Assembly: GCA_036785375.1 (NCBI GenBank)
Contig: JAWMAR010000010.1
Span: 6,262,001 to 6,326,000, forward strand
Reading direction: 5' to 3'
Length of the DNA: 64,000 nucleotides
From: Leucoraja ocellata
Lineage: Eukaryota
The notes below the pieces were generated by a model, which was given only the letters and a program-made list of their open reading frames with translations, was not told where the DNA came from and did not search any database. The translations under genes were made by a program, and so were the position numbers. Below are positions 15,025-37,216 of this stretch, in pieces; position 1 is the stretch's first letter, and every line of letters starts with the position of its first letter.

Positions 15025-15028
15025 TATC

Positions 15029-15069
15029 AAAATAAAGCAAACCAATAAATGTTAGGTAAGTGGTTTAAT
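15029..15069 (-). promoter_or_regulatory. Putative poly(A) signal ATTAAA and U-rich downstream element of cassette B
   Basis: Minus-strand ATTAAA at 15069-15064, followed by GGTTTGCTTTATTTT. The same arrangement occurs downstream of cassette A (28227-28269). Confidence 0.5.
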
Positions 15070-15136
15070 CACGTTGATATCTTTTCAATCTAAACGAATT
15101 AATTGATTACATGCTTCAGATTAAGAATAGCGCGAC

Positions 15137-15249
15137 TTAAATTCCCTGACACCTTCGTATGACTCGCCGGTGGTTGGCCGATTGGATGTACACGGTGTTC
15201 GAAATTTCGGTCCTCCCAGCCTCCTGCGATCTATCAGTATCGACCATTT
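15137..15249 (-). CDS. Terminal (cytoplasmic) exon of receptor cassette B
   Basis: Acceptor CTGTCCACTGCAG|AAATGG. Spliced to the TM exon (phase 2) it reads R-NGRY* (TGA at 15236-15234). The phase-1 frame reads EMVDTDRSQEAGRTEISNTVY...GI*. Aligns with exon 29183-29244. Confidence 0.65.
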
Positions 15250-15379
15250 CTGCAGTGGACAGAACATGAGTTATTAAAGTGAGTGTGGGTAATGGTACAT
15301 ATACATGACCACAGTTAACCGCCAGCAGAAATATTTGACGGTGGTTTGTCCGGGACTTCAACTGAACGGAGACTCTTCG

Positions 15380-15615
15380 GCCGCACGGTGGCGCAGCGGT
15401 AGAGGTGCTGCCTTGCACTGGTGCCGTCTGTGTGGAGTGTGTACCGCGTGTTTTTTTCTTCCGGGAGCTCCCTTCTCCTCCCGCACTCGCAAGACGTGCA
15501 GGTTTATGGGTTAATTTGCTTATTAACTTGCAAATTGCCCCTCGTGTGTCGCGTAGTGGTCTACGCGGACTGGATGGGCCGAAGGTCTGTTTCCTCGCTG
15601 TACCTCTCAGTCTAA
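15380..15615 (+). mobile_element. tRNA-derived SINE (elasmobranch HE1-like), degenerate
   Basis: A-box TGGCGCAGCGG; the 3' end GGGCCGAAGGTCTGTTTCC resembles the CR1 3' end. Confidence 0.7.
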
Positions 15616-16289
15616 AGTCATTATTTACAACAACATTTGGGGTTAACACGCAATCGCATGCGCCTAACCGCAGGCCAAGGGAGTCAAGAGTGTTTTAATG
15701 TCATATGTCCCAAATAGGAGAATAAAATTCTTACTTGCTGCAGCACAACAGAATATGAAAACATACTACATAACGGGAGAAAAAAAGTTCAGTGTGTATA
15801 TATACGCAGAATGGCGAACGACAGGTGGATATTAATCTCTGCAGGTGGAAGGTGTAGCATTTTGTTTCTATTGGTGTCAGTACGACACACACAAGGAATG
15901 GGAACGTCCTGGTTTGCATACAGGGACAGAGGGATCTTCGTTTAGAAATCGAAGGAGCGAAGGAAGGCAGAGTATTGGAGATCAGGGAAGGACTGAGATG
16001 AGAATCTGAGCAGTAATATGGTTGTCAACAATGATCACACAATTAGATTCATTTGAATTATATTAGGTTGCTAATATCTTGGAATGGTCAACCCTACAGA
16101 TTAAACTGGATGTCAGAGAAGGGAGTGGCTATGGAGGTTTAATCATGACCCAAACACATCAGCGAGCTAGACAAAACATGCTGCAATAACTCAATGGGTC
16201 GGGCAGCATGTCTGGGGTAAAAATGAATAGGTGACGTTTCGGGTCGAGACCTTTCATGACCGAGCTTTTAGCTCTAGGAGCAAGACGAT

Positions 16290-16880
16290 GGGCGTTTTAC
16301 GGCACCGGGCCTGTACTCGCCGGAGTTTAGAAGGCTGATAGTGGACTTCATTAAAACTTACCGAATAGTGAAAGGCTTCGATAGAGTGGATGTTGTGCGG
16401 GTGTTTAGTGGGAGAGTCTAGGGCTAGAGTACATAGCCTTAGAATTAAAGAACGTGCATTTAGGAAGGAGATGAGGTGAAATGTAATTTGTCATAAGCTT
16501 GTGAATCTGTAGAATTCTGCCACAGATGGCTGTGGAGGCCAAGTTAATGGATATTTGTAAGGCAGGAATAGATAGATTGTTGATTAGTTCAAGTTCAAGT
16601 TCAAGTTCACATTTATTGTCACATGCACCAATTATAGTACAGTGATATTTGAATTACCATGCAGCCATACAATTAAAAGGACACATTACACGATAGAACT
16701 TAACATAAACATCCAGGACAGCGATCACTGGAGGAAGGCAATAAGTACGGGTGTTGAGGGTTATGGGGAAATAGCAGGGGGGTGGGGTTAGCAGGGAGAA
16801 ATAGATCAGCATGATTGAATGGCGCAGTAGATTTGATGAGTCAAATGGCCTAATTCTACTCCTGTCACGTGACCTCATGA
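16290..16880 (+). mobile_element. CR1 3' fragment interrupted by a short minus-strand element with an (AGTTCA)n end at about 16585-16740
   Basis: CR1 C-terminal motifs lie on both sides. TTGATTAGT before the insertion continues as TAAGTACGGGTGTTGAGGGTTATGGGG after it. Confidence 0.65.
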
Positions 16881-17229
16881 TTATGCTTTTTCGGTCCCAT
16901 CTGGGGCTGTGATTAGGACTTATCAACGAGTCTCAGTGCAGGTGGAATGGACAGAGCCAGCAGTGTCTTGGGCTTCTACTCCGGTGAGGAACCAGTGATT
17001 TGCCAGGCATATATTGTGTGTTTGCATTTATGAAGGCAATTCAACGTGGAAATATACAAAAGTTACCAACAGCAAAAATAACCTTTTTGAAGAGCATCGC
17101 TGTTATAATGTGGAAAGTGAAGGCGGGAGAATGGGAGGAAAAGATAGATACGCCATGACCGAATGACGGAGATTCGATGAGCCTTATGGCCCAATACTGC
17201 TCCTATCACTCATGAACGAACCACTGCCC

Positions 17230-17505
17230 AACGCACGGTGGCGCAGCGCTGGAGAGTTGCTGCCTCACAACGACCCGTCTGTACGGAGTTTGTACGTTCT
17301 CCCTGTGACCAGCGTGGATTTTCTCAGAGTCCGGTTTCCTCCCACTCTCCAAAATCGTAGAGGGTTGCCGGCTAATTGGCTTGATATAATTGTGAATTAT
17401 CCTTAGCGTATGCAGGACGGTGTTAGTAGTGTGCGAAGATCGCTGGCCGGCTATCACTCAACAGGCCTGTTTCCGCATTGTATTTTAAACGGAACTAAAC
17501 TAAAA
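17230..17505 (+). mobile_element. tRNA-derived SINE (HE1-like)
   Basis: GCACGGTGGCGCAGCG A-box, body GTACGGAGTTTGTACGTTCTCCC and (CTAAA)n tail. Confidence 0.75.
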
Positions 17506-17559
17506 GCACAAACTGGTTCTCTGTTACTTAGAGAGAAAGGAATGCATAATGTTACATAC

Positions 17560-17659
17560 CTGAGTTTGGCACTACAATAAATGAAAGACATCACTAACAG
17601 GGCAAAGGTTTTCAATCCAAGCGGAATACACAAGATCACAATGGGGGCAACCTGTGTGA
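17560..17659 (-). CDS. Transmembrane exon of cassette B, with an intramembrane Lys
   Basis: Acceptor TCTCTCTTCAG| and donor AG|GTATGT; 100 nt, phase 1 to 2; encodes VTQVAPIVILCIPLGLKTFALLVMSFIYCSAKLR. Confidence 0.88.
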
Positions 17660-19882
17660 CTGAAGAGAGAGTGAGATAGGTCAAACAAGACTCTAGCAAA
17701 GAGAGTGAGAAAGTACTAATGGAGGCGGCTCATTTATAAATGTGGTGATAATGTGTCGTTAAACAGCAGAATTATTCTGACAAAAGTGAGGGTAATGCGT
17801 GTGAGTGAAATAATGAGAAAAGGGAGATTAAAAACCACATAGCAATCACGCCGACAGGACTTTAGACGCGATTGTGTAACGTTCCTCCTGTACTGACTTA
17901 ATTGGCAACGGACAATGTGCCATTTCAAACGGCTGCGAACTGAAGTGCTTGAAATGGGTGGTAAATCCGGGCGACGGTTAACATTGTAAATGTGCAGTAT
18001 CATTGGCAATACGCCAGTATTCACAGTAGCACAGTCAACATCACAGTCACTAGTGTATGTATATAGGTGGATGAAGCAGGAACTGCGGAGAGAGTGATAG
18101 AACTAATACTCCAGGTCAGTGAAGGAACTCTACATTTCCAAATCTACTAATTGCTCTTTTTCTGTTTTCAATTAACTCAGTGACTGGCGCTCCACGTCCA
18201 CTGGGGCCGGCTGGTGGTGATGGTGGGGGGTCACACATATCCTACACCTACATATCCCAACACAGGTCTACACACTCGAGCCGAGTGCATCTTCACCGCA
18301 CTCCCTCGACACCATTAATATGTTTATTGTGCAAAACGCAAAGAGATGGAGTAAGGCGGTGGGTGAGGAGGTATCTGTGGAAGCAATGCGCAGGAGATCT
18401 TTTGGTCGGGAGCCCTTCAGAACGATTGCATTGAGGAGATAAAGCGGGAAGAGATTCGGGGCGGGGCAATGCCTGACAAGTGATAGGTGGACCCATGTGG
18501 GGAGTGTGTTAATGATTGATTTCTCAATTTGCGTTAAGAAGAACAAAGCTGCCCTCAGTTCTGCAGGTGGAATCGCACCCTGACCCCATATAATTATACA
18601 GTATTGAGACATTTTTATTGACGTACACAAATAATCTCTTAATACAAATTAACTAGCCAGAGCAGTTGTGGTCTCTTGTACATCGGCCTGTCGGCCTTCA
18701 GTGTAACATACATACAATGCCAGATCGCTCTGATCATCGACGGTGCCCCAACTTCTCATAGTTAACACATACTCTGCTTTTACGCCTTGTTCACCCATTT
18801 GGCATGCGTCACATTTAATCTCATTATTAGTTTAATTTAGTTTAGTTTATTATCACGTGCACCTAGGTGCAGTGAAAAGCTTTTATGGCTGCCGCGTTCC
18901 ATCTGCCGCGTTCCCACCCAACCTTTGGCCTGCCCACACCCACTGAACCTTCTTTACATCATCGTGCCCACCCAGAGTCTCATCTTCTCTTTTGTCATTC
19001 GTCAGATTGCAACTCCGTCATTTGAACATTCAGTCAAAACACTAATACATGTAGGGACTAAATGTGGCCGCTGCATTGCACGCTATGGTATCCAATTGGC
19101 CACAATTGGTCAATCTGCCAGAGATGCGTTTATCCCCAATTTGCTATCTAGTCCGAGAACCAATTTTCAATCACGGGCGCATGGTCCCCTACGTCCGACT
19201 ACTCCGGATTTCAGATTGTTGACCAATCTCCCATGCGGGACTTGACCGAGATCCTTCTGAAAATCCAAACACTCCACATCAATTAGCCTTCTTCAATTCT
19301 ACTCATCACATCTTGCATAAATCCATGCTGAACATAGAAAATAGGAAACTGGAGCACATGAACCGGCCCTTCGGCCCACTGTGTCTGTACCGCATATTAT
19401 GCCAAGCAAAACTAATCTCGTCTGTCTGCACACACGATTCATACCATCCTATTCCCTGTATATCCATGTGCCGATCTAAAAGCCTCTTAAATGTCACCAA
19501 CGTATCTGCTTTCACCACCACCCCTGCCAGCGCGGCCCATGCACCCACCACTCTCCACTTCAACAACTTGCCCCGCACACCTCATAGCCTATTTCGCCTG
19601 CAACCTAAGTCCTCTAGCCTTTGTTTTGTGTTCTGCTATTCCATGCTTCATTATGAGGTTCAGTTTCCAAAGGCTGACCAAAATCTTTCATAGCAATTTG
19701 CCGAGCAGACTACACGTTAGTTTAACAAGTCCAGGTCAATGTAGTTACTGCTGAGTGTGGCTACCGAGATCCCGCCCCCAGGTCCCTGATCTTCAACTTT
19801 ACGAGCCGAGAGGCGGGTTTTCTGTTCCTGCTCCCCTTCCTCCCTCCACCCCCTCGCTGGACACTGCAGAATGGTTTGTTAC

Positions 19883-20263
19883 CGGGTGTGACACGCAGCC
19901 GGACCTCACGCTGGTACTGATGAATAAACGGAGGGTATAAAATAGAAAAATATTTTGCCTCCGGTTTCCTGATCGGCACGAGACACAAGTAGCCATGACT
20001 GTCGTCCACCCTCAGCTGCTTTATCCAGGTTGAGGCGTTTCCGCGCTCTGGGTTGCCGACCAGCTTGAACCGAGTTGCTCCGTTCTCCGCCGCCCAGGAT
20101 CCATCAGCTTGGGGTCTGAACGTGACGATGTGTTGGTAGGGATCCTTCCTCATCCATGTGACCGCGAGAGGGGCGTGCTTGAGCGGAGGCGGTGGGAACA
20201 CACATGATAACGTAGCCGAAGCCCCCTCAGTCCCAGTCACCACTGAGACATTCTCGCCGGAAG
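19883..20263 (-). CDS. Ig V-set exon of cassette B (Siglec-15-like V domain lacking the essential Arg)
   Basis: Acceptor TCCTTCCCTCAG| and donor CCG|GTAACA; 381 nt, phase 1-1; motifs ATLSCVF, VTWMRK, RFKLVGNPERGNAS and DSHGYLC. Confidence 0.9.
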
Positions 20264-20399
20264 CTGAGGGAAGGACAGACACCGGAATGTATCAGCGTTC
20301 TGTGGGTGAATTATCTTCACACTCTAGCAAGTCTCTACCATCTCCATGCACGTTTGTTCGTCTAATTCCAGTTCAGATTTAGGTGCTCTTAGAATAACC

Positions 20400-22500
20400 C
20401 CAACAAAGTCTACACAAGTTACATATAGATTGGGCCAACCAAATTGGTAACAGCGCTGGGGAGGAGCATTTCCTCGAATATAGATTTTTTAGCCAATATG
20501 TAGAAAAAAATGACTAATGGGCAGGCCACTCTAGACTGGGTATTGAGTTGATGAAGGATTAGTTAGCAATCTTGTTGTGCTATGCCCCTTGGGCAACAGT
20601 GACCATGTTATGATGGAATTGTGCATTAAGATGGTGAGCGACACGGTTAATTCACAGACTAGGGACTTGAACTTAAAGAAAGGAGACTTTGGCGGTATGA
20701 AACGGTAGCTGTATGGGATAGTCTGGTAAATGGTACTTATAGAGTGACGCTGGAGTTACAATGGCAAATATTGAAAGATCACATGATGAACTACATTTAT
20801 TCATCCCAGCCTGGCGTAAAAATAAAACGGGGAAGACGGCTCAACCGTGACTAACGTTGCAACAAAAGGATAGCGTTAATTTCAAGGAAGAGGCATATAA
20901 ATTGGCCAGAGGAAGCAGCAAACCGGAGGACTGGGCGAAATTTAGAATTCAACGAAGGAGGTCAAATTGGTTAATTAAGAGGGGGGGGGGGTGATAGAGC
21001 ACGAAAGAACGCTTGCGGGGAATATAAAAACTAACTGTAAAAGCTTCATTACATATGTGAAGAGGAATAGATTAACGAAGGCAAATGTAGATCCCTTACA
21101 ATCAGAGACAGGTGAATTTATAATGGGAAATAACGAAATGGCAGAACAGTTAAACGAGTAGTTTGGTTCTGTCTTCACTAAGGAAGACACAAACAATCTC
21201 CTAGAAATACTAGGGGCAGATGATCTAGTGGGAGGGAGGAAATGAAGAGAATCCATTATTAGTCGCGAAATTGTGTTATGTAAACTGTTGGGACTGAAGG
21301 CAGATAAATCCCCAGGGCCTGATGGTCTGCATTCCAGAGTACTCAAGGAGGTGGCCCTGGAAACAGTGGGTGCATTTGTGATCATTTTCCAATGCTCTCT
21401 CGATTCTGGATCAGTTTCTGTGCACTGGAGGGTAGCCAATGTAACTCCACTTTTTAAGAAAGGAGGGAGAGGAAAAACAGGGAATTATAGACCAGTCAGC
21501 CTTACATTGGTTGTGGGAATGATGCTTGAGTTGATTATTAAAGATGTAATAGCAGCGCATTTGGAAAGTAGTGACAGGATCGGTCAAAGTCAGCATGGAT
21601 TTACGAAGGGGAAATCATGCTTGAAGTGTTTTTTGGATTTATTTGAGGATGTAATACGTATAATAGATAAGGGAGAACCAGTGGATGTGGTGTATCTGGA
21701 ATTTCAAAAAGCCTTTGACAAGGTGCCACACAAGATATTAGTGTGCAAAATTAGAGTACGATGTATCGGAGGACGGGTATTGACATGGATAGAGAACTGG
21801 TTGGCAGACAGGAAGCAAAGAGTAGATATTAAGTGGTCCTTTTCAAAATGGCAGGCAGTGAATAGTAGGTTGCCGCAAGGCTCAGTGCTGGCACTCCAGT
21901 TATTTACAATATATATTAACGATTTAGATGAAGGAAGGTATGTAACATCTCCAGGTTTGCGGATGACACAAAGCTGAGTGGCAGAGTGAGCAGCGAGGAG
22001 GATGCTATGAGACTTGAATATGATGGGTGAGTGGGCAGATGCAGTAAAATGTAGACAAAGGTGAGGTTATCCACTTTGGTAGCAACAACAAGAAGGCAGA
22101 TTATAAACATATAACCATATAACAATTACAGCACGGAAACAGGCCATCTCGGCCCTACAAGTCCGTGCCGAACAACTTTTTTGGTGTCAGATTAGGAAAA
22201 CGCTAGGTGCAACGAGACCTGCGTGTGCTTGTACAGCAGGGAGTGAAGAAAGCTAATGGCACATTGGCCTTCATTGGGAGAGAATTTGACTTTAGGAGCA
22301 AGGAGGTCCTACTGTAGTTGTACAGGGCCCTAGTGAGGCCACACCTGGAGTATTGTGTGCAGTTTTGCTCTCCAAATTTGAGGAAGGACATTCTTGCTAT
22401 TGAAGAAGTGCTGTACAGGTTCACCAGGATAATTCCCGGGATGGCGGTACGGGTATATGAGGAAAGAATGGGTCGATTGGGCTTGTATTCCCTGAAAATT
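20400..22500 (+). mobile_element. Degenerate CR1 ORF2 fragment, with a roughly 75-bp inverted CR1 3' end at about 22105-22180
   Basis: Motifs KSPGPDG, NYRPVSLT, FQKAFDKVPH and PQGSVL. The insert is the reverse complement of about 13830-13895. Confidence 0.88.
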
Positions 22501-24204
22501 AGGTTTTGTATTCCCTGAAAATTAGGTTGTACCTCCGGTCAATAACATCGCGTCTGATCTGCTGTCAAACCTCTCTCCATACCCCCCCCCCTGCTCTCTG
22601 TCAACGTTTGCCCTCTTGCTTATCGTGTCTCACTCTGTTTTATGAATGGCGGTCTCCATACGCATTTTCCTCCAACTTAGCCGTGACCAGATAACCTTCA
22701 CGAACGGCTCGGTGCGTCAAGGGGGCGCCTCACCACCACCTTCGGAAGGACACTTAGGTATGGACAATATCACCACATTCCCCACCCGCCCAACCTCATC
22801 CATTGACATCAATTGATCTATTTTCCGTCTCAATCGCATTCTGTTGCCTTTTACCCATAACCCTGACACCCGTACTAATACATTATCCATCTCTGTCATT
22901 AAAATATCCATTGACGGCATCGACAGTTTTCGGTGGCAACGAATTCCACTGGTTCAGCAACCTCTGACTAAATATATCCCTTCTCATCTCCTTTCTAAAG
23001 GCACGCCCTGCTATTTAGAGGCCACAGCCTCTGGTCCACTAGTGGAAACATCCTCATCCGGAGAGTGCTGCAAAGCAGACAGATCCAGAGGTACAATGAT
23101 ATTGTGGCCTTGGGGTGACAGTTAGTTACTGTAGCGAAGAAGGAGTATGGCACGCTTGCTGTCATTGGGCAGCACTTTCAATATTATAAGTGGGGCTTTA
23201 TGTTACAGCCCTTCAAGGGTTGGACGAACCAAAGGTTTGCGGAGAGGGTGGTCTCTACGGAAAGCGGAAATGGATGGGGATGGGAGAAGGTTGAATTTTG
23301 GCGAGTAAGGCTTTCAACAAAGTACGGGGATGATTAGAACGTGTTTTAAGGAGTCAGATTTCCTTCCATAGATCGGGCAAACAGGTTTGACTGAACTTAA
23401 TCCCCCCTCAAGAAAAATCCCCATGGACGCACAAGTAGAAGTCCGGCATAAAGGAAGACGGCGGGCGTTGAAGATTGGACTTTGCACAATTTCAATCCTC
23501 CAGATGTGTAGATGTGGTCAAAAGTGCAACTCAAGCTGTGCACGATGTTGCATGCAACACTACTGTTTGCATGAACAGATGCTATGCGGAGGATGCGTGT
23601 AGTATGGAAGGAACCTCTTTGGTGGTAGAGTGCGTTCTGCTTTTTTATTTCCCTGTGTTGCCCGGTAACCCCATCCACCTGTGACCCCTCTGCTCCATGT
23701 TCCATTGGGACAACGGGAAATGTTCTTGTACAACATTTGATGGAGGCAGCCATTTTTGGTTGAAGTCCTGTTTCATCACCAGCCACCAGCCAACCATTCA
23801 CACTGAGCCCACATTGATCCCATTCAGTCCAATACAGGCTGTATCTCATTCCCGGGTACCCGTCATCTCTGTTTGTTTCTATTCACCCCGAGGCTGTGAA
23901 CATTGTTTCTGGACTTTGCAGTTTCTGTGAGGAATTGAATCTAAAGAATGAATCAAACGCTGTCAAGCTGCAGTGTGAGCGACAGCACAACTCTGCAAAG
24001 ACAATCCCACAGTCACTTCCTCACCAACAGCTAAATCGGTGATCTCACGCAATGTTCTTTTCTTGGCAGAACAGAGAGCTATTTAGGAATGAAAGGTGCA
24101 GCAGCAAACTTTGCCTCCAGTGGAATCCTACATTGGGCAGCAGTGAAGCCACACAGGGGAATAAGTGGATGCTATTCCTAGTGGCCGACATTGATGTGCG
24201 TGTT

Positions 24205-24930
24205 TTGTTTAGTTTAGTTTAGTTTAGTTTAGTTTAGTTGTTTGTCACGTGTACCGAGGAACAGTGAAAAAACATTGGTTACATGCTAACCAGTCGGCAG
24301 AAACACAATAAATGATTACAACAGAACCATTTACAGAGTATAGATTCGTGATATGGAATTTCGTTTAGTGCAATGTACAGCCAGCAAATTCCGGCCAAGG
24401 AGACTCCTAGGTTCATCAAAAAAGGTAAATAGTAGTTCAGTCCTGCTCTCTAGTTGTGGTAGGATGATTCAGTTGCCTGATAACAGCTGGGAAGAAACTG
24501 CCCCTGAATCTGGCGGTGTGCGTTTTCACACTTCTCTAACTGTTGCCTGATGGGAGAGGGAAGAAAAAGGTGGGCAGGGTGAGACTCGTCCTTGATTATG
24601 CTGCTGGCCTTGCCCAGGCAGCGTGAGGTATAAATTGAGTCTATAGAAGGGAAGATGGGTTGTTTGATGGTCTGGGCTGAGTCTACAATTCCCTGCAATT
24701 TCTGGCGGTCTTGGATGGAGCTGTTCCCAAACCAAGCTGCGACGGCACATGATAAAATGCTTCCCAAAGCGCGTCTGTTGAAGTTAGTGAGAGTTGTCGG
24801 GGACTTGCCGAACTTCCTAAGCCTTCTAAGGAAGTAGAGGCGCTGTTGTGCGTTCTTGGTCATTGCTTCAATATGGGTGGTCCAGGAGAAGTTGCTGGGG
24901 ATATTGACTCATGGGAATTTGAAGTTTTCA
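24205..24930 (-). mobile_element. Rex1/Babar-type 3' fragment with (TAAAC)n tail
   Basis: ORF 24450-24863 encodes AQQRLYFLRRLRKFG; (GTTTA)n at about 24207-24240. Confidence 0.85.
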
Positions 24931-28052: not shown

Positions 28053-28226
28053 CTACGGTGATTGGCTGGAGAATGGCGGGGAATGGACTGAGATTTGTGC
28101 AAGATAACAGGTAACAAAAAACAGAACTGGAGATGAGTCAAATGCTCGATGTGGCCATGGATCCAATGGGCCGAATGGTCCTTTGGAAATGTTACAAGCA
28201 ATTCAGAACGTCATTGTATTAAAATT

Positions 28227-29182: not shown

Positions 29183-29244
29183 TTATATTGCAGTCGGAAC
29201 ACTGGTCTGCTCAGCTTCCTCGGATGGATCAGTCTCCACGCATG
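29183..29244 (-). CDS. Terminal (cytoplasmic) exon of receptor cassette A
   Basis: Acceptor CTTGTTGTGTCCGCAG|CATGCG. After the TM exon it reads S-MRGD* (TGA at the same offset as in B). The phase-1 frame reads CVETDPSEEAEQTSVPTAI*. Confidence 0.65.
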
Positions 29245-29799: not shown

Positions 29800-30030
29800 T
29801 ACCACGGTGGCGCAGTTGTAGAGATGCTGCCTTGCAGCGGAGAGTCCCGGGTTCGATCCTGATTACGGGTGCTGTCTGTGCGGAGTTTCCACGTGCTCCC
29901 CGTGACTGCATGGTTTTTGACCCTCCCATATCCCAAAGACTTGCGGGTTTGTAGGATAATTGTCCTCTGCAAACTCCCCCTATATTGCAGGATAGAACTA
30001 ATGCATGGATGATGATGGTTGGCGCGGCCT
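29800..30030 (+). mobile_element. tRNA-derived SINE with A and B boxes
   Basis: CACGGTGGCGCAGTTG (A box) and GGTTCGATCC (B box). Confidence 0.75.
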
Positions 30031-30109
30031 AGGAAGCCTCACAGTTTTCAATCACACACCAAAGGTCATTGAGTTTATATTCCAGGCATAGAAACGCGAC
30101 ATTACGTAC

Positions 30110-30210
30110 CTGAGTTTGTCACGGTAGAAGATAACACACATCACTAAAAGGACAATGGTTTTTAGTCCGAGAGGGATCCACAGGATCAGAAACCTTGTAA
30201 CTCTGTGTGG
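30110..30210 (-). CDS. Transmembrane exon of cassette A, with an intramembrane Lys (not in the ORF track)
   Basis: Acceptor CTCTCTCCTCAG| and donor AG|GTACGT; 101 nt, phase 0 to 2; encodes PHRVTRFLILWIPLGLKTIVLLVMCVIFYRDKLR. Paralog of 17560-17659. Confidence 0.88.
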
Positions 30211-31527: not shown

Positions 31528-31937
31528 CGGGTGTGATCCGTACCCGGAGCTGGACCTCACGCTGGTACTGATGGGTGAACGGGGGGTGTATGAAGCTCTG
31601 GTACTTACATCGATGTATTTTAACGCATTGTTTTCAGTTTTGTTGAACTCCACCAGACACAGGTAGCCGTCACTGTCCTCCACACTCAGCTGCTTTATCC
31701 TGGTTGAGGCGTTTCCCTGCTCTGGGTTCCCGACCAGCTCGAACCGAGTTGCTCCGTTCTCCGCCGCCCAGGATCCATCAGCTTGGTGTCTGAACGTGAC
31801 GATGGGCCGGTAGGGATCCTTCCTCATCCATGTGACCGTGAGGGCCCTGGGGTAATGCGGGGATTGCGGATACACACATGGTAACGTGGCCGAACCCCCC
31901 TCAGTCCCATTCACCACTGAGACATCCCCGCCGGGAG
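31528..31937 (-). CDS. Membrane-proximal Ig V-set exon of cassette A
   Basis: Acceptor TCCTTCCCTCAG| and donor CCG|GTAAGA; 410 nt, phase 1 to 0; motifs ATLPCVY, VTWMRKDPY, RFELVGNPEQGNAS and DSDGYLCLVEF. Confidence 0.88.
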
Positions 31938-33039
31938 CTGAGGGAAGGACAGACACCGGAATGTATCAGCGTTCTGTGGGTGAATCGTCTTGTACCGACC
32001 TCTCCCTGTGTGAGTGGGTGGAGCCGGTGCCCAGTGTGGAGCTGACAGTGATGGTCCCAGGGAAGGTGGGCCAGGGGGCGCAGGGGACAGGACACATTCA
32101 AGGGTGGCTCCGGATCAGGGGTCACTGGACGCCTCTGACAGCGCGGCTTTCCCACGGCGCTGGCCCTGAGAGCGAGAGTGAGCGACAGCGAACCCGCGCC
32201 TCCCCGGAACCCAACTCTATTCTCCACGGGGAATATTCAATGTGTGAAGCGGTGAACTCCACACCGAGAGGGAGACCCACCCACAGGGGATTGGGCACCG
32301 ACACCTCCTTCACTACTGTTCTCCAACACATTAATAGTTCCAACAAGGTGATCACCATCTTGCTATTTCTCGGATTACACAACCCACCTGTATTTGACTG
32401 TGGACCAGGCCCGGCGTCTCGTCTACTCCAGGAACGCACTGGCCAGACGGATTAACTGGAGAGGAATCAGGAGCAGGAACCCTGGCCGTTCAGCCCCACC
32501 CCCCCCCCCCCCCCCCACCCCCCCCCCCCCCCAACCCGACCCCACACGGCGATGGTTCTCGTCCAGCAGCGCGGCTGCGAGTGTTCTCCGGCTTGGCCCT
32601 GCTGTAGGACCGGCTCGCCGACCGCGGATCTAACGACTGGACCCGCGCCGCAAGAACGAAGAGGAACCCGGGAGCAAACGCCGAGAGGAAGGTGGGCCGT
32701 CGGAGAGTGAGGAGGGTCGTCTGATAGTGTGGAGGGTCGACGGAGAGTGAGCAGGGCCGTCGGAGGGCGAGGAGGGCAGCCGAGAATGACAGTGAGGGGA
32801 GGTGGGCCGATGCCACCAGCGGCAGCAGGCAGTAGAGAGAACTGCCGTGAATCTTTGCATCTGTCGGCGCCAAAACGTGGCGACACTTGTGTACTGTCAA
32901 GGTGACGTCCGCTACATGATTGTCAAGTCAAACTGAAATGAAAGAACAGGTGCAGAGAAATGCTACATTGAAATCACGAGACAGTGGGGACAGAAACCCA
33001 GACGGCCGAGTTCTGCCCGGGGGTTAAAAGGGCACACAG

Positions 33040-34074
33040 TAGCAATGTTACAACATTTTGAGATTTAAAAATCAAGTCTGTAATTTATCCCATCAGATAA
33101 AGCATAACAATAAGTTTAATTTGACACCTAATTCACTTTCATATCTCAAGTATTTAAAAAGTTACGCCATTTTCATACTCGGAAATTAGCATCTTGTTCC
33201 CTATTGATTTTCCAGGGACATAACAAAAAAACTGTGATCATGGACAGTCAAAAGGCCATAACCTTCTTAAAAATTAAGAGAACTGAATGAAATTTTCAGT
33301 TATCGTAGATTGAACCATTCTGAAACAAACATAAAATAATCTAACTTGGATGACCTGAAATTAAAGCATATAATTATTTAGTTACCCAAGTGTAGCAAAT
33401 TTCAAACTTCAATTACTAGATCTAAACATCTATCCATTTCTTAATAAATGATTAACGTTTTTAAATAGCCCAAGTGTCCAAATAATATTCATAAATAATT
33501 CACAATAAAACATGATTTTAAAATCTCATTTACATCAATTTATAGGCCAAATGGAAGGAATTTAGTGTTCAATTGCTGTAAGTTAAAGTCCATTTTAAAT
33601 TGGCTTTCTAGTGGGTTCCTGTGAACGCGCTGGTTTAGAACGTTCACATTGCGCTGGATTTGTGCCTCAAATGCCCAGAAAAATACTGCGGGATAGAAAC
33701 AGCCCAAAATGAGCTACTCGCTATAGTAAACTTTATAAACAGGGTTCTTAAGAAGCCCCTTTTAATGTAAAAGTAAGGTACATACCTTTAATTGTTTGCT
33801 TTATAAAACCCTGGGCTGCGAGAGGTCGCGGGTTTAGAGAGTGATTTTTAAACTACTATAACTATTATACAAGGCCATAAAAAACTAATAATACCTTTTG
33901 CGACGGGGTCTTTCAGCGATTTTTCGTTAATGATTTACTAGGCTGAACATTTTCGATTGCAACAGCCTAGTAAAAATCGCGTTTTAAACCCGCCCCTCTA
34001 ACAGCGCCAAAATCACACACACGGGGTGGGGCAGATTCTCAGCCACGATTCAGGTAGGTTTTGTAAGATACCTA
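33040..34074. mobile_element. Non-autonomous DNA transposon (MITE-like, about 1 kb)
   Basis: Imperfect TIRs TAGCAATGTTACAA and TTGTAAGATACCTA; direct repeat CACACAG at 33033-33039 and 34075-34081; AT-rich with no long ORF. Confidence 0.75.
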
Positions 34075-35063
34075 CACACAGCACCAGACGCCAGTGAAGA
34101 AGACAGAAGAGACTTGCGTGCGGGAAAACTTGAACAAAAAATCAAAAGGACTGTCCGAAAAGACTGTGGCGATAGCCAGAAAAGGCAAGCAGGACTGATT
34201 TTCTACAGACCTGATTGGCAGCCGGTAAGGACTGAACTCTAAATGAACTGAGCCGAAGACTGCAGCCCCAGAGACTCTGTTTAACCCTTTAATATCTGAG
34301 AAACTTGTCTGGCTAACGTGTTGATTGAGAAAGTTTGAAATAGTGGTGGTGTATGTTAACCAAGATGACAGGGTGATGATAGTGTTTGTTGTCTATGTAA
34401 AGTACATCCTGCTTCATTGTGGGGTTAAGGGCTAATGTGAGCTAATTTCTAATACTTATATGCTATGTGTGGTGTTAGTTGAAATAATTGCATTTTAAAA
34501 AATATGGTAAAAATGTGTTAAAAAACAGTAAAGATTCATATGATATTAAGCTAACAAATTGGTAACAGTAGTGGGCATTATCTGTATTTTTCATTTAATG
34601 AAATGTGAAAATTATTTAAAAAACAAAATGGCTGCTATGAGTTGGAATGTTAGATACATGTAATTTTCTGTTATTTATATTTAGTTACAGTAATGTGTAT
34701 ATTTTTTGCCTTTGTGTCTAAAGGTTTTTCACCTGGTAAAGACTAAAACTGCTAAAGACTAATCTTCCAAAATAAAAGGTGGAAAAGAAGTGTTTGGTCT
34801 GAGTGAATCCAGTTCATCATTTCGGGGTAGATAAATCAAATCCCTTTCAAGCGGGGAATCTGCAAAAACATTAGAAGACTTGACAATGATTGTTCTGGGT
34901 TGTCTGCAAAACAACGTATTTCACTGTACCTGGGCACGTGTGAGAATACAGTATCATTGAATCATTGAATTGAACCATCAACATGTATTGATCAGCATTG
35001 TACCGGGGGAACCCGCGGTCCGTGAGGTCTGGGGCAGCGACAGTCTCTGAACATTGGTCTCAC

Positions 35064-35348
35064 CTTCCACAGTCAGCACCGTTGGAATCACAGATTGAAA
35101 GCTGTTAATGTTGAGCTCCGCGCGGCACCGGTACTTATCGCTGTCCACCCGTCTCAGTCGCTCCACCATTATCGAGGCATCTCCCTCGCTGAGGTTCCCC
35201 ACGAATTTGAACCGACTTCCGGCCTCCTGTGGCACTTCATCGCATCGGAAGGGGCCGTGACTGGGATATGTGCAGTTCAACACAAGGTTGGGAGGCTTTG
35301 GTGACAACTTGTTTGTGCCACAGCACGGAGCCGGTGAGGGTGTGATCA
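35064..35348 (-). pseudogene. Siglec-15-like N-terminal V-set exon; 5' part lost in the gap; frameshifted by a 4-bp duplication
   Basis: Removing one ACAA copy (35309-35316) gives DHTLTGSVLWHKLSPKPPNLVLNCTYPSHGPFRCDEVPQEAGSRFKFVGNLSEGDASIMVERLRRVDSDKYRCRAELNINSFQSVIPTVLTVE. Donor AAG|GTGAGA, phase 1. Confidence 0.85.
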
Positions 35349-35548
35349 NNNNNNNNNNNNNNNNNNNNNNNNNNNNNNNNNNNNNNNNNNNNNNNNNNNN
35401 NNNNNNNNNNNNNNNNNNNNNNNNNNNNNNNNNNNNNNNNNNNNNNNNNNNNNNNNNNNNNNNNNNNNNNNNNNNNNNNNNNNNNNNNNNNNNNNNNNNN
35501 NNNNNNNNNNNNNNNNNNNNNNNNNNNNNNNNNNNNNNNNNNNNNNNN
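35349..35548. other. Assembly gap (200 N)
   Basis: Run of N. Confidence 1.
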
Positions 35549-36625
35549 AGTAGGAGTAAACGGGTCCTTTTCACAATGGCAGGCAGTGACTAGTGGGGTA
35601 CCGCAAGGCTCAGTACTGGGACCCCAGCTATTTACAATATATATTAATGATCTGGATGAGGGAATTGAAGGCAATATCTCCAAGTTTGCGGATGACACTA
35701 AGCTGGGGGGCAGTGTTAGGTGTGAGGAGGATGCTAGGAGACTGCAAGGTGACTTGGATAGGCTAGGTGAGTGGGCAAATGTTTGGCAGATGCAGTTTAA
35801 TGTGGATAAATGTGAGGTTATCCATTTTGGTGGCAAAAACGGGAAAGCAGATTATTATCTAAACGGTGGCCGATTGGGAAAGGGGGAGATGCAGCGAGAC
35901 CTGGGTGTCATGGTACACCAGTCATTGAAGGTAGGCATGCAGGTGCAGCAGGCAGTAAAGAAAGCGAATGGCATGTTGGCTTTCATAGCAAGAGGATTTG
36001 AGTATAGGAGTAGGGAGGTTCTACTGCAGTTGAACAGGGTCTTGGTGAGACCACACCTGGAGTATTGCGTGCAGTTTTGGTCTCCAAATCTGAGGAAGGA
36101 CATTATTGCCATAGAGGGAGTGCAGAGAAGGTTCACCAGACTGATTCCTGGGATGTCAGGACTGTCTTATGAAGAAAGACTGGATAGACTTGGTTTATAC
36201 TCTCTAGAATTTAGGAGATTGAGAGGGGATCTTATAGAATCTTACAAAATTCTTAAGGGGTTGGACAGGCTAGATGCAGGAAGATTGTTCCCGATGTTGG
36301 GGAGGTCCAGGACCAGGGGTCACAGCTTAAGGATAAGGGGGAAATCCTTCAAAACCGAGATGAGGAGAACTTTTTTCACACAGAGAGTGGTGAATCTCTG
36401 GAACTCTCTGCCACAGAGGGTAGTTGAGGCCAGTTCGTTGGCTATATTTAAGAGGGAGTTAGATGTGGCCCTTGTGGCCAAGGGGATCAGAGGGTATGGA
36501 GAGAAGGCAGGTACGGGATACTGAGTTGGATGATCAGCCATGATCATATTAAATGGCGGTGCAGGCTCGAAGGGCCGAATGGCCTACTCCTGCACCTAAT
36601 TTCTATGTTTCTATGTTTCTATGTT
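35549..36625 (+). mobile_element. Young CR1 3' portion with an open RT C-terminus and (TTTCTATG)n tail
   Basis: ORF 35586-36524 encodes GVPQGSVLGP and KFADDTK; tail TTTCTATGTTTCTATG. Confidence 0.93.
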
Positions 36626-37169
36626 TTCCCCGTAACCATTGACGTGCACACTATTCAAACCCTATCCACCTTATCTATAAAAACACCCAATGACGTCCTC
36701 CACAGTCGGCTGTGGCAATGGATTCCATAGGTTCGCCACCCTCTGGCTAAATACATTCCTGCACATACCCACATCACATAGCTGGTTCGTAACCTTCGGC
36801 GCCTTGGTAATTCTAGTGAGCACACTGCATCGACCGCTTCCGGGCTGTGAGACTGCTCGTCTACACCACCCCCACAGTCAGAGCATCCCAGATTCCAAAT
36901 ACACTCCAAGTGAATAGTGCTCTCCAGATATCCTCCAAACACATTACTCCTTGGCTGAAAACCACGACCACTACTTGCCAAAAAATGTCCCTACCCTTTA
37001 CCCTCTCCATGACCTGACTAATATCGTCTACATATATCTTCACCCCACACCCTCCCCAACACTGTCGCGTCGATTCCCAAGAATATGAAACTCGGCTATG
37101 TTTTTACCCCAGCTAGTAATCTGATCAATCTTCTCCGTGTTCGGGTATGCAATTATGCAGATAGCTCAC

Positions 37170-37216
37170 AACAATGTATAATTGCAAAAGTGTTAATTAA
37201 ATAAAAACTCTAACAT
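37170..37216 (-). pseudogene. Candidate leader-peptide exon with a 1-nt insertion in a T run
   Basis: AAAACATG start. With one T removed it reads MLEFYLINTFAIIHC followed by a phase-1 donor T|GTGAGC (46 nt). As assembled it stops after 7 codons. Confidence 0.3.

What the first reader, a model, noticed from the sequence alone, without database searches (positions are those of the whole stretch)
15029..37216. Hidden expanded cluster of Siglec-15-like, DAP12-type activating receptors with a V-V-TM(Lys) architecture
Seen: phase-compatible minus-strand exons for V1 (35064-35348), V2 (31528-31937), TM (30110-30210) and tail (29244), plus further V-TM-tail sets at 20263-15137 and 59627-54473. Established: Siglec-15 has a V-set domain with YFCRVE (sialic-acid-binding Arg) and an extra Cys pair after the C strand, then a C2 domain and a TM Lys that recruits DAP12. 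V1 here matches (YRCRAE, NC-x9-C, RFKFVGN..DASIMVERL), and all TM exons share IPLGLKT. The second domain, however, is another V-set derivative (YLCLV, no Arg, no extra Cys pair), and I found no C2 exon. Inference: a lineage-specific, tandemly expanded activating immune-receptor family rather than single-copy Siglec-15.
Basis: partly seen in the sequence, partly recalled or inferred. Interest (0 to 1): 0.85.

Follow-up and report, generated by a model that had tools for sequence, protein, structure and literature searches.

The report
Skate Siglec-15-like two-V receptor genes
This stretch of a skate-like genome carries copies of an immune-receptor family that descends from Siglec-15 but has two V-type domains and no C2 domain; the family is real and widespread in sharks and rays, although the copies here look partly damaged.

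Summary
The exons are real. Minus-strand V1 (35064-35348, cut by the N gap), V2 (31528-31937), TM (30110-30210, IPLGLKT) and a 5-codon tail (from 29244) have the stated splice sites and phases. RNA reads of a related skate label cross the V1|V2, V2|TM and TM|tail junctions.

V1 is a Siglec-15-type V domain. A family profile hits human Siglec-15 first in the PDB (E 1.1e-22), with the F-strand Cys-Arg and the Siglec-15-specific extra disulfide aligned. V2 is a second V-set domain, and no C2 exon is present.

Gnomon already models this family across sharks and rays, in Lys-TM (activating-type) and ITIM-tail (inhibitory-type) versions. I found no paper describing it.

Corrections:
- The two other "sets" are 98.9% identical copies of a 39.3-kb repeat that straddles the gap. 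Their leader and V1 are only relics, and their tail is 5 codons, not the long ORF ending at 15137.
- Gene B has three frame breaks relative to its orthologues: +1 in V1, 32-34 nt from the gap; -1 in V2; +1 in TM, which compensates the V2 break.
- DAP12 pairing and sialic-acid binding remain inferences.

Verdict: a new variant of a known kind, of moderate interest.

The parts
35064..35348 (-). Gene B, V1 exon, 3' part only. It is a Siglec-15-type V-set domain. Positions 35313-35065 are in frame (83 codons: NKLSPKPP...YRCRAEL...TVLTVE). Positions 35347-35314 read in another frame (DHTLTGSVLWH). The donor is G|GTGAGA in phase 1.
   Evidence: (84.3% identity to L. erinacea LOC129695285 over 83 aa). 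The joint 31937|35064 is seen in RNA reads.
35349..35548 (.). Assembly gap (200 N) that cuts the V1 exon. Its 5' part and its acceptor are not in the readable sequence.
   Evidence: The gap was not filled or looked up.
31528..31937 (-). Gene B, V2 exon (V-set, YLCLV, no Arg). One base is missing after ...KYID (about 31607) relative to orthologues. The ancestral G strand (HQYQREVQLRVRITP) is therefore out of frame and the exon ends in phase 0.
   Evidence: V-set 4.3e-14; AF2 mean pLDDT 83; residues 101-120 score 52-63.
30110..30210 (-). Gene B, TM exon with Lys (LILWIPLGLKTIVLLVM). It is 101 nt against 100 nt in the A copies. One extra T (about 30190) makes it readable only from a phase-0 acceptor, which compensates the V2 shift.
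   Evidence: (92.9% identity to L. erinacea LOC129695295 over 28 aa). Joints 29244|30110 and 30211|31548 are seen.
29229..29244 (-). Gene B, coding part of the last exon: (AG)C ATG CGT GGA GAC TGA, which reads S-M-R-G-D-stop. The stop is at the same place as in orthologues (…SKRED-stop).
   Evidence: Joint with CT..AC ends in 10 reads.
19883..20263 (-). Copy A1, V2-type V-set exon (381 nt, phase 1 to phase 1) with the G strand YQREVRLRVTP in frame. The donor reads GTAACA.
   Evidence: (89.6% identity to L. erinacea LOC129715273 over 135 aa).
17560..17659 (-). Copy A1, TM exon (VTQVAPIVILCIPLGLKTFALLVMSFIYCSAKL), entered in phase 1.
15234..15249 (-). Copy A1, coding part of the last exon: R-N-G-R-Y-stop.
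23682..24012 (-). Copy A1, relics of a leader (24012-23968: LWDCLCRVVLSLTLQ, no ATG, with a stop just upstream) and of the start of V1 (23807-23682). The rest of V1 is not recognisable.
   Evidence: (E 0.024-0.32 in a 17-kb search space). The A2 counterpart ORF has no Pfam hit.
59247..59627 (-). Copy A2, V2-type V-set exon. It is 97% identical in protein to A1, with 6 non-synonymous and 3 synonymous differences.
   Evidence: 91.1% identity to LOC129715273; AF2 mean pLDDT 90.7, G strand 113-125.
56896..56995 (-). Copy A2, TM exon with IPLGLKT.
54570..54585 (-). Copy A2, coding part of the last exon: R-N-G-R-Y-stop.
63047..63377 (-). Copy A2, relic leader (63377-63333) and relic start of V1 (63172-63047).
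   Evidence: (E 0.002-0.05).
1..24640 (.). First copy of the 39,336-bp repeat. Its partner is 39337-64000. The window edges cut the alignment at both ends.
   Evidence: 98.886% identity over 24,684 columns. (211 mismatches and 20 indel events; 0-3 mismatches per kb in the first 10 kb, and up to 40 per kb around the V exon).
39337..64000 (.). Second copy of the repeat. It lies on the other side of the assembly gap from the first copy.

Best explanation
WHAT IT IS
The window holds members of a multigene family of type I membrane receptors that is found throughout sharks and rays and descends from the Siglec-15 lineage.

A complete member has these parts, as seen in database models:
- a signal peptide;
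- V1, a Siglec-15-type V-set domain. It has the WSM start, AVLPCTFTHP, the extra C'-C'' disulfide, and Cys-Arg on strand F;
- V2, a second V-set domain with a long F-G loop. It is itself derived from a Siglec-15-type V domain and is shared with the chondrichthyan V1-V2-C2 Siglec-15 genes;
- a transmembrane segment.
There is no C2 domain.

The family comes in two signalling versions:
- a Lys-containing TM (IPLGLKT) with a tail of a few residues;
- a TM without Lys, followed by a long tail with ITIM-like tyrosine motifs.

HOW IT WORKS (INFERRED)
These are paired receptors. V1 binds a sialylated ligand through the Arg. The ITIM versions inhibit. The Lys versions signal by pairing with a DAP12/DAP10-type adaptor, as Siglec-15 does.

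WHAT THIS WINDOW HOLDS
Only Lys-type copies are present.
- Gene B has V1-V2-TM-tail. Its V1 is closest to an inhibitory skate receptor, and its V2 and TM are closest to an activating one.
- There are two near-identical copies of gene A. Each has V2-TM-tail, with leader and V1 decayed.

As assembled, B is not an intact copy of the ancestral reading frame and A lacks usable 5' exons. I put about 60% on the copies here being non-functional or mis-assembled. The family-level reading does not depend on that.
For: SHOWN
- Exons, splice sites and phases were read directly.
- In oligo-dT RNA raw reads, coverage is confined to exons and repeats, with zero depth in the bins 30371-31370 and 31971-32770. 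Joints: 29244|30110 in 10 reads from 8 starts; 31937|35064 in 6 reads from 6 starts; 30211|31548 in 3 reads from 2 starts.
- An all-against-all search with the A2 V exon found 85 proteins at E<=0.001 and 14 at E<=1e-30.
- A search with a full-length skate member found 90 hits at E<=0.001, all from elasmobranchs.
- The 30-sequence alignment shows the leader-V1-V2-TM architecture and the two TM/tail versions.
- That profile against the PDB puts human Siglec-15 (7zoz) first, at E 1.1e-22 in one stretch covering V1. AVLPCTFTHP, both extra Cys, RFRxxGN and YxCRVE are aligned. The next best single stretch is pIgR at 5.4e-07.
- The extra bridge C95-C104 and R143 on strand F are described for Siglec-15 in PMC10264397 (passages read).
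- Frog Siglec-15 V scores 74.5 bits on the V1 HMM and 65.7 bits on the V2 HMM.
- Careful tree of 79 domain rows: V1-type rows split from V2-type rows (97/86). Family V1 including window V1 forms a clade (100/99). Family V2 including the three window V2 exons forms a clade (98/99). Window V1 groups with the two inhibitory skate V1s (100/98). The A copies group with L. erinacea LOC129715273 (100/99).
- Arg at the R143 position: 62 of 86 family V1 domains overall; 26 of 26 in ITIM-tail proteins and 12 of 23 in Lys-TM proteins. The extra Cys pair is present in 81 of 86 (isoforms counted separately; tail type assigned by a regular expression of mine).

INFERRED
- Adaptor pairing, from the TM Lys and from Siglec-15's known use of DAP12/DAP10 (PMC10264397 introduction).
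- Sialic-acid binding.
Against: - Single-sequence evidence for V1 is weak. Pfam V-set is below cut-off. The best PDB hit of V1 alone is mouse TIM-1 at 0.001, ahead of Siglec-15 at 0.0054.
- Foldseek with the A2 V model finds generic V-set folds, with Siglec-15 only at rank 36.
- The RNA run carries the species label 'organism A', while the best DNA holders carry 'organism B'. 3,036 of 3,969 laid reads are only 90-95% alike.
- The V2|TM joint carries 13 letters that differ from the window. The joints therefore show the exon structure of the family in a related skate, or of paralogues. They do not show transcription of this locus.
- Gene B has three frame breaks relative to orthologues. No leader was found for it.
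- The A copies lack a start codon and most of V1.
- No near-identical protein was found to confirm the shifted peptide (15 hits, best identity 75%).
- MDIR, CD300 and TREM sequences were not in my tree.
- Database names are pipeline labels, not evidence.
Confidence: 0.8

Rival explanations
1. Gene B is a working gene. The V2 (-1) and TM (+1) shifts are a fixed, compensated pair that replaces the V2 G strand and stalk with new sequence. The V1 (+1) shift next to the gap is a contig-end error.
For: - The two shifts restore the TM frame, and the 33 shifted codons contain no stop. By chance that is about 0.2, times about one third for frame restoration.
- All splice sites are intact.
- AF2 still places strands at 113-116 and 122-127, with pLDDT 82 for residues 121-130.
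- The V1 break is 32-34 nt from the gap edge.
Against: - The AF2 result leans on an alignment whose other rows carry the true G strand, and residues 101-120 score only 52-63.
- The related-skate reads at the V2|TM joint carry the unshifted, phase-1 form.
- No leader or V1 5' part is readable.
- The rate of 1-nt indel differences between the two repeat copies predicts 0.29 such events in 796 coding nt. P(>=3) is 0.003, so the breaks are unlikely to be all errors.
Confidence: 0.25
2. All three copies in the window are decaying duplicates (pseudogenes) inside a repeat-rich array. Only their paralogues elsewhere in the genome work.
For: - Gene B has three frame breaks.
- The A copies have a leader relic without ATG, preceded by a stop, and no recognisable V1 beyond about 40 codons.
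- pN/pS between the A1 and A2 V exons is 0.64, so no clear constraint is seen.
- LINE insertions lie around and between the exons.
Against: - The A V2 and TM exons are fully open, with intact splice sites apart from a GTAACA donor in A1. They are about 90% identical to an annotated skate gene.
Confidence: 0.45
3. The 39.3-kb 'tandem duplication' is a false duplication. Two haplotypes of one polymorphic region were both kept and scaffolded one after the other across the 200-N gap, so the window holds one A gene, not two.
For: - The two copies lie on opposite sides of the gap.
- Divergence is very uneven: 0-3 mismatches per kb over 10 kb, but 19-40 per kb around the V exon. That pattern is expected of alleles at a polymorphic immune locus.
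- The alignment is bounded only by the window edges.
Against: - Tandem arrays of such genes are usual. Gene identifiers of family members in other species are consecutive on single chromosomes.
- The transition:transversion ratio of 103:108 is odd under either reading.
- This was not testable here, because read laying was already used.
Confidence: 0.35
4. The domains belong to another V-set receptor family (CD300/pIgR/TREM/MDIR, TIM, JAML, CD276), and the Siglec-15 likeness is superficial.
For: - V1 alone hits TIM-1 best.
- The A V exon alone scores best on CD276, at 3.9e-14 summed over two domains, and it hits pIgR.
- NCBI names some members pIgR-like, JAML-like or HAVCR1-like.
Against: - With profiles, Siglec-15 is first for the V1+V2 profile (1.1e-22) and for the V2-type profile (3.2e-27). 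In the second case three V2-C2-TM rows add collinear C2 and TM columns.
- The Siglec-15-specific extra disulfide and the Cys-Arg are aligned.
- No CD300, TREM or NKp44 chain is among the 60 best listed matches of either profile search.
- Frog and lungfish Siglec-15 V domains fall on the V1-type side of the tree.
Confidence: 0.06
5. Gene B is simply the skate orthologue of single-copy Siglec-15.
For: - V1, the TM Lys and a short tail match Siglec-15.
- 11 of the 90 family models are named Siglec-15 by NCBI.
Against: - Chondrichthyans have separate V1-V2-C2-TM genes, found in Callorhinchus LOC103174418, Mobula, Heptranchias, Rhincodon, Scyliorhinus, Rhinoraja and Amblyraja. Their V1 forms its own group (95/91) outside the family V1 clade (100/99).
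- The window has no C2 exon.
- The family has many members per species.
Confidence: 0.03

Closest known systems
Siglec-15 of bony vertebrates (human structure 7zoz; frog Gastrophryne and lungfish Protopterus models P0066 and P0040)
   Same: - An N-terminal V-set domain with the same hallmarks: the WSM start, AVLPCTFTHP, the extra C'-C'' disulfide, RFRxxGN, and Cys-Arg on strand F.
- A Lys in the TM in the context LG[LFA]K[TA]L.
- A short tail.
   Different: - Siglec-15 has a C2-set second domain; here the second domain is V-set and there is no C2 exon.
- This family has many genes per species and includes ITIM-tail versions.
- Family V1 forms its own clade.
Chondrichthyan V1-V2-C2-TM 'Siglec-15' gene models (Callorhinchus milii LOC103174418, P0031; Mobula hypostoma XP_062903801, P0022; Heptranchias P0025)
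   Same: - Both V1 and a V2-type second V domain are present.
- The Lys-TM is of the form ..CLIPLIKFLLLL.. or ..LMPAAKCLFLL..
- Both Lys-TM and ITIM-tail versions exist.
   Different: - They keep a C2 domain between V2 and TM.
- HMM scores are 53-79 bits, against 170-216 bits for family members.
- They fall in separate groups in the tree.
Annotated but uncharacterised skate models: Leucoraja erinacea LOC129695295 (activating, P0100), LOC129695285 (inhibitory, P0004) and LOC129715273 (P0099); Amblyraja radiata LOC116971356 and LOC116971354
   Same: - Same family and same exon layout.
- Window V2 of B is 95% identical to P0100 over 103 columns.
- Window V1 is 84% identical to P0004.
- The A copies are about 90% identical to P0099.
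   Different: Those models have intact frames and their own leader and V1. The window copies have the breaks listed above.
Paired activating/inhibitory receptors such as mammalian CD33-related Siglecs and PILR (recalled from general knowledge; not compared by sequence beyond the PDB hits)
   Same: It works like them: near-identical ectodomains sit on either an ITIM tail or a charged TM, and the ligand-binding Arg is kept in all inhibitory members but lost in about half of the activating ones.
   Different: Different lineage. CD33 chains score 3.8e-10 or worse, against 1.1e-22 for Siglec-15.
Skate MDIR (modular domain immune-type receptors)
   Same: A skate multigene IgSF family with charged-TM and ITIM members (recalled). 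One paper in the library mentions it, seen only in the search listing.
   Different: Not compared. No MDIR sequence was available to me, and none turned up by name among the hits whose names I saw.

Membership tests
Siglec-15 lineage | The N-terminal V-set domain is specifically similar to the Siglec-15 V domain. | tested here: met
   The family profile (30 sequences, closest orthologues of the window genes included) hits 7zoz first in the PDB, at E 1.1e-22 with 82.6 bits over profile positions 13-152. Window V1 scores 104.5 bits on the family V1 HMM. Window V1 alone against 7zoz is only 0.0054.
Siglec-15 lineage | Arg on strand F directly after the canonical Cys (human C142-R143), which is needed for sialic-acid binding. 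| tested here: met
   YRCRAE in window V1 is aligned to YFCRVE. The role of R143 comes from PMC10264397. In the family, 62 of 86 V1 domains have R. V2 has L at this position (YLCLV).
Siglec-15 lineage | An extra C'-C'' disulfide (human C95-C104), described as unique to Siglec-15. | tested here: met
   Window V1 has NC-x9-C. Both Cys columns align with the human pair. The pair is present in 81 of 86 family V1 domains. Source for the human bridge: PMC10264397.
Siglec-15 lineage | A C2-set second domain. | tested here: not met
   The second domain is V-set (Pfam 4.3e-14). No C2-like exon is found in the window. Reads join V2 to TM directly (3 reads). None of the 30 aligned family members has a C2 domain.
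Siglec-15 lineage | A Lys inside the transmembrane segment. | tested here: met
   IPLGLKT is present in all three TM exons.
Siglec-15 lineage | Association with DAP12/DAP10, and sialoglycan binding. | not testable with these tools
   Both need co-immunoprecipitation and glycan-binding assays.
Siglec-15 lineage | One-to-one orthology with Siglec-15. | tested here: not met
   Family V1 (100/99) is separate from chondrichthyan V1-V2-C2 V1 (95/91) and from frog and lungfish V (99/90). There are many genes per species.
Paired activating/inhibitory IgSF receptors (functional class) | Closely related ectodomains combined either with a charged TM and short tail, or with an uncharged TM and an ITIM tail. 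| tested here: met
   Alignment A1 shows both versions. Window V1 groups with the V1 of the two inhibitory skate receptors (100/98), while its TM is 92.9% identical to that of an activating one. Only Lys-type exons lie in this window.
CD300 / pIgR / TREM / MDIR group | V domains closest to those families. | tested here: not met
   The best single pIgR stretch is 5.4e-07, against 2.4e-22 for Siglec-15. No CD300, TREM or NKp44 chain is among the 60 best listed matches. MDIR itself was not tested, because no sequence was available.
TIM (HAVCR) family | A six-Cys IgV domain followed by a mucin stalk (recalled). | tested here: not met
   TIM-1 is the best single-sequence hit of V1 (0.001), but TIM chains fall to 2.6e-08 or worse with the profile. 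Family V1 has four conserved Cys, and V2 follows it rather than a mucin stalk.

The most novel reading that the evidence does not exclude
Sharks and rays built a fast-evolving paired-receptor system out of the Siglec-15 lineage, which bony vertebrates are generally taken to keep as a single conserved gene. They duplicated the V domain, dropped the C2 domain, and multiplied the gene into ITIM and Lys-TM versions.

The ITIM versions all keep the sialic-acid Arg (26 of 26), whereas the Lys-TM versions keep it in only about half (12 of 23). That is the signature of self-sialic-acid sensing by inhibitory receptors, with pathogen-driven activating counterparts. It would have arisen independently of the mammalian CD33-related Siglecs.

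On this reading, gene B would be such a counterpart of the inhibitory LOC129695285-type receptor, kept open by a compensated frameshift.
Probability: 0.4. Interest if true: 0.75.

Novelty: new variant of a known kind. Interest (0 to 1): 0.55.

Why it matters
Siglec-15 is treated as the old, conserved Siglec that signals through DAP12, and it is a drug target in bone disease and cancer.

A whole shark-and-ray family built on its V domain would do three things:
- It would show that the Siglec-15 scaffold can also feed a paired-receptor arms race. The family has a second V domain, no C2 domain, and both inhibitory and activating versions.
- It would give natural variants of the binding site. The Arg is kept or lost, and the F-G loops vary in length.
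- It would make it possible to test whether DAP12-type pairing and sialic-acid recognition predate the split between cartilaginous and bony fishes.

For genome annotation, it flags loci that automatic pipelines label inconsistently (Siglec-15, sialoadhesin-like, JAML, HAVCR1-like, pIgR-like, uncharacterised). It also flags a possible false duplication at an assembly gap.

Tried and rejected
- Leader search. A scan for ATG-hydrophobic-donor mini-exons upstream of B and A gave nothing convincing. tblastn with the N-terminal 66-150 aa of seven relatives found only the relic leader and relic V1 start upstream of the A copies, and nothing upstream of B.
- DNA-level search for the 3' part of V1 upstream of the A copies found only chance matches.
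- C2 exon search found none.
- The long A 'tail' ORF ending at 15137/54473 is rejected. It is in the wrong frame for the phase-2 TM donor, and orthologues end after 5 residues.
- A 41-nt mini-intron inside the V2 exon of B (GTAAGT...CAG) would restore the G strand. I considered it and rejected it as too short for a vertebrate intron. This is my judgement, and no read showed it.
- The search for homologous proteins on V1 of P0100 alone reached only 29 elasmobranch proteins and no bony-vertebrate Siglec-15, because of the word-index limit.
- The same tool with the B V2 ORF found no near-identical protein. The 15 hits had at most 75% identity, and only proteins of 84-268 aa could be seen. The frame shift is therefore neither confirmed nor refuted by independent data.
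- Foldseek with the A2 V model was not discriminating.
- AF2 on the B V2 exon was ambiguous.
- pN/pS between A1 and A2 was uninformative at 0.64.
- Paper searches found no description of this family: Siglec-15 + shark (15 papers, none on shark Siglecs by title or abstract); Siglec-15 + elasmobranch (0); Siglec + cartilaginous fish + DAP12 (0); Siglecs / elephant shark / Siglec-15 (no paper among the 12 listed held 'elephant shark'); DAP12 / TYROBP / cartilaginous / shark (nothing relevant among the 10 listed); 'modular domain immune-type receptor' (1 paper, listing only). Subscription journals are not covered. Supplements were not opened.
- I searched and folded exon by exon. Full-length comparisons used natural database models only.
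- The search of earlier findings by words returned nothing.

Full report
1. WHAT IS IN THE SEQUENCE

Three-frame translation and the DNA around each claimed exon confirm four minus-strand exons of one gene, which I call B.
- V1 is 35348..35064, with donor G|GTGAGA in phase 1.
- V2 is 31937..31528, with acceptor CCCTCAG| in phase 1 and donor |GTAAGA in phase 0.
- TM is 30210..30110, with a phase-0 acceptor and donor AG|GTACGT in phase 2. It encodes LILWIPLGLKTIVLLVM.
- The last exon starts at 29244 and reads S-M-R-G-D-stop, ending at 29229.

Pfam calls V2 a V-set domain (4.3e-14). V1 alone stays below the cut-off (0.0011, 19.6 bits against 26).

Two further V-TM-tail sets, which I call A1 and A2, exist.
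- V exons: 20263..19883 and 59627..59247.
- TM exons: 17659..17560 and 56995..56896.
- Their last exon reads R-N-G-R-Y-stop (15249..15234 and 54585..54570).

2. THE GAP, TESTED FIRST AS ASKED

The 200 N at 35349-35548 cut the V1 exon.
- The 11 codons next to the gap (35347-35315, DHTLTGSVLWH) match the orthologues in one frame. The remaining 83 codons (35313-35065) match in another. One extra base sits in an A-run 32-34 nt from the gap edge.
- Beyond the gap (35549-39336) nothing resembles the missing V1 start or a leader. A LINE reverse-transcriptase fragment on the other strand begins 38 nt past the gap.

Continuity and frame across the gap cannot be established.

3. THE REPEAT

- Positions 1-24640 and 39337-64000 are 98.886% identical over 24,684 columns. 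Both ends of the alignment are set by the window edges, so the window shows about 1.6 units of a 39,336-bp period.
- The copies differ by 211 mismatches (103 transitions, 108 transversions) and 20 indel events, 9 of them single-base.
- Divergence is very uneven. There are 0-3 mismatches per kb in the first 10 kb, against 19, 40 and 22 per kb around the V exon.
- The two copies lie on opposite sides of the gap. A true tandem duplication and a false duplication of two haplotypes both fit, and I could not test depth.
- A1 and A2 differ at 6 non-synonymous and 3 synonymous sites in the V exon (pN/pS 0.64).

4. TRANSCRIPTS

The look-up of sequencing runs listed no run on record as RNA that holds the stretch. 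The best DNA holders carry the label 'organism B' (share 0.52). The RNA raw-read runs offered carry 'organism A'.

I laid four runs on 29171-35170 at 90% likeness. In the oligo-dT run X18, about 5% of the run was read and 3,969 reads were laid, of which 3,036 were only 90-95% alike.

Depth:
- Depth sits on the exons. It is about 19 on V2, and 3-5 on V1, TM and tail.
- Depth is high on two repeat-derived blocks.
- Depth is zero in the intron bins 30371-31370 and 31971-32770.

Joints:
- 29244|30110: 10 reads from 8 starts, CT..AC ends.
- 31937|35064: 6 reads from 6 starts, CT..AC ends.
- 30211|31548: 3 reads from 2 starts.

The last joint carries 13 letters that differ from the window. Read on the minus strand, they give the unshifted, 6-nt-shorter exon end (...QLQVT-) in phase 1.

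The predicted junctions therefore exist, and V2 is spliced straight to TM without a C2 exon. However, the reads come from a differently labelled skate and possibly from paralogues. They show the exon structure of the family, not transcription of this copy.

5. THE FAMILY

- A search of 1.84 billion representatives with the A2 V exon found 85 proteins at E<=0.001, 36 at <=1e-10 and 14 at <=1e-30.
- A word-index search with the full-length Rhinoraja member P0002 found 90 proteins at E<=0.001. All are from sharks and rays. [quoted passage not shown] Others are named sialoadhesin-like, JAML-like, HAVCR1-like, pIgR-like, A33-like or uncharacterised.
- Nearest relatives of the window exons: the A copies are 89.6% and 91.1% identical to L. 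erinacea LOC129715273; B V1 is 84.3% identical to the inhibitory LOC129695285; B TM is 92.9% identical to the activating LOC129695295.
- In the tree alignment, B V2 is 95% identical to LOC129695295 over 103 columns.

An alignment of 30 members (A1) shows leader, V1, V2 and then one of two endings:
- ..LCIPLGLKTLALLVM.. followed by a tail of about 5-15 residues;
- a Lys-free TM followed by a long tail with ..SCTYASI.. and ..V(I/T)YAAV.. motifs.

6. RELATION TO SIGLEC-15

- The A1 profile against all PDB chains puts human Siglec-15 (7zoz) first, at E 1.1e-22, in a single stretch covering V1. Aligned features are the WSM start, AVLPCTFTHP, both extra Cys, RFRxxGN and YxCRVE. The next best single stretch is a pIgR domain at 5.4e-07.
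- PMC10264397 (passages read) describes the V-set plus C2-set layout, R143 on strand F, and the C95-C104 bridge as a unique feature. It also describes signalling through the charged TM with DAP10/DAP12.
- V2 is also a Siglec-15-type V derivative. The A exon alone hits the Siglec-15 V domain at 3.3e-06. Frog Siglec-15 V scores 74.5 bits on the V1 HMM and 65.7 bits on the V2 HMM.
- Chondrichthyans also have V1-V2-C2-TM genes, in Lys-TM and ITIM-tail versions. These are found in Callorhinchus LOC103174418, Mobula, Heptranchias, Rhincodon, Scyliorhinus, Rhinoraja and Amblyraja.
- A profile that includes three of them is collinear with human Siglec-15 over V, C2 and TM (3.2e-27).
- Frog Siglec-15 is V-C2-TM(K). 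One lungfish model is V-V-C2-TM(K).

Careful tree of 79 domain rows, 131 columns, bootstrap not fully settled:
- V1-type rows split from V2-type rows: 97/86.
- Family V1 plus window V1: 100/99.
- Family V2 plus the three window V2 exons: 98/99.
- Chondrichthyan V1-V2-C2 V1: 95/91.
- Frog and lungfish V: 99/90.
- Window V1 with the two inhibitory skate V1 domains: 100/98.
- A1, A2 and LOC129715273: 100/99.

The rows were chosen by me from 189 stored proteins. No MDIR, CD300, TREM or CD33 rows were available.

7. BINDING-SITE PATTERN

Among 86 family V1 domains in 82 stored proteins, with isoforms counted separately:
- Arg at the R143 position is present in 62 of 86.
- It is present in 26 of 26 domains from proteins with an ITIM-like tail.
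- It is present in 12 of 23 domains from proteins with a Lys-TM.
- It is present in 24 of 37 unclassified or partial models.
- The extra Cys pair is present in 81 of 86.

Tail type was assigned by a regular expression of mine. Window V1 has the Arg.

8. STATE OF THE COPIES HERE

Relative to orthologues, B has three frame breaks:
- +1 in V1, next to the gap;
- -1 in V2 after ..KYID, which puts the ancestral G strand HQYQREVQLRVRITP out of frame;
- +1 in the TM exon (101 nt against 100 nt), which restores the TM frame.

The 33 shifted codons have no stop. The chance of that is about 0.2.

The rate of single-base indel differences between the two repeat copies predicts 0.29 such events in B's 796 coding nt. 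P(>=3) is 0.003 and P(>=2) is 0.035. The breaks are therefore unlikely to be all assembly errors, although contig ends are error-prone.

AF2 results:
- The A2 V exon gives a confident V-set fold, with mean pLDDT 90.7 and G strand 113-125.
- The B V2 exon gives mean pLDDT 83, with 52-63 over residues 101-120 and 82 over residues 121-130. This result is ambiguous and is biased by the alignment.
- Foldseek finds generic V-set folds, with Siglec-15 at rank 36.

The A copies keep open V2, TM and tail exons. Upstream they have only a leader relic without ATG, with a stop directly before it, and about 40 weakly similar V1 codons (E 0.002-0.05). Nothing of the rest of V1 is left.

No near-identical protein exists in the searched collection within the visible length range.

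9. VERDICT

- The Siglec-15-like, V-V-TM(Lys), no-C2 reading is supported.
- The family is lineage-specific, but it is paired rather than purely activating, and it is already modelled by annotation pipelines in other species.
- The 'expansion' seen inside this window is weak evidence: one damaged two-V gene plus two copies of a 5'-decayed gene across a gap.
- DAP12 pairing and sialic-acid binding are inferences from conserved residues.
- Notes from this scan report many Siglec-15-like loci on other pieces of the same genome. I did not check them.
- I found no paper describing the family in six searches.
- I worked exon by exon and did not join the window's exons into a spliced model.

Noticed in passing
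window 10092-13817 (+) and its copy 49427-53153 (+): A nearly full-length non-LTR retrotransposon with three consecutive ORFs. The first has a weak GDSL-esterase/OSK-like match, below Pfam's cut-off (9.5e-05). The second is an endonuclease (Exo_endo_phos, 3.3e-15). The third is a reverse transcriptase (RVT_1, 7.8e-35). It accounts for the strong positive GC skew of 8-14 kb and 48-54 kb.
   Followed up: partly
window 2037-5154 and 7252-8528 (copies at 41373-44490 and 46588-47864): Further retroelement pieces. An RT ORF on the + strand (RVT_1 4.7e-29, followed by an ALKBH8_N-type match) is nested against RT-bearing ORFs on the - strand. Several ORFs on the - strand have no Pfam hit.
   Followed up: partly
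window 29771-29970 and 32971-34170: Two intronic blocks of gene B reach very high depth in all four runs laid (up to about 2,000 summed contig depth and about 280 reads deep in X18). They carry many differences and loose ends. They look like expressed or abundant interspersed repeats shared between skate species, not part of the gene.
   Followed up: no
window 27585-28053 and 36150-36621: An inverted pair of 472 nt at 96.4% identity flanks gene B, downstream of its tail and upstream of the gap. It may be two copies of one repeat element. It could matter for rearrangement of the unit.
   Followed up: no
window 9210-9432 and 9588-9761 (copies at 48545-48767 and 48923-49096): Short tandem arrays just upstream of the LINE. 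One has an 80-nt unit with 2.8 copies at 95% matches. The other has a 51-nt unit with 3.3 copies.
   Followed up: no
window 19883-20263 against 59247-59627: Four of the six amino-acid differences between the A1 and A2 V exons lie in the F-G loop or the G strand, and one more is at the end of strand F. The donor of A1 reads GTAACA where A2 has GTAAGA.
   Followed up: partly
database proteins P0179 (Callorhinchus milii), P0019 (Protopterus annectens), P0003/P0098/P0001 (rays, sharks): The V domains of this lineage are multiplied in other models. Examples are three V1 before V2-C2 in a chimaera ITIM receptor, seven V1-type domains in a lungfish protein, and V1-V2-V1-V2 or V2-V2 arrangements in elasmobranchs. 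These may be real modular genes or merged tandem genes in the gene models.
   Followed up: no
database proteins P0032, P0037, P0030 (lampreys): Lamprey proteins with two to five V1-type domains, labelled Siglec-12 or JAML-like, fall on the V1-type side of the tree as one group (100/99). This hints that the Siglec-15-type V domain predates jawed vertebrates.
   Followed up: partly
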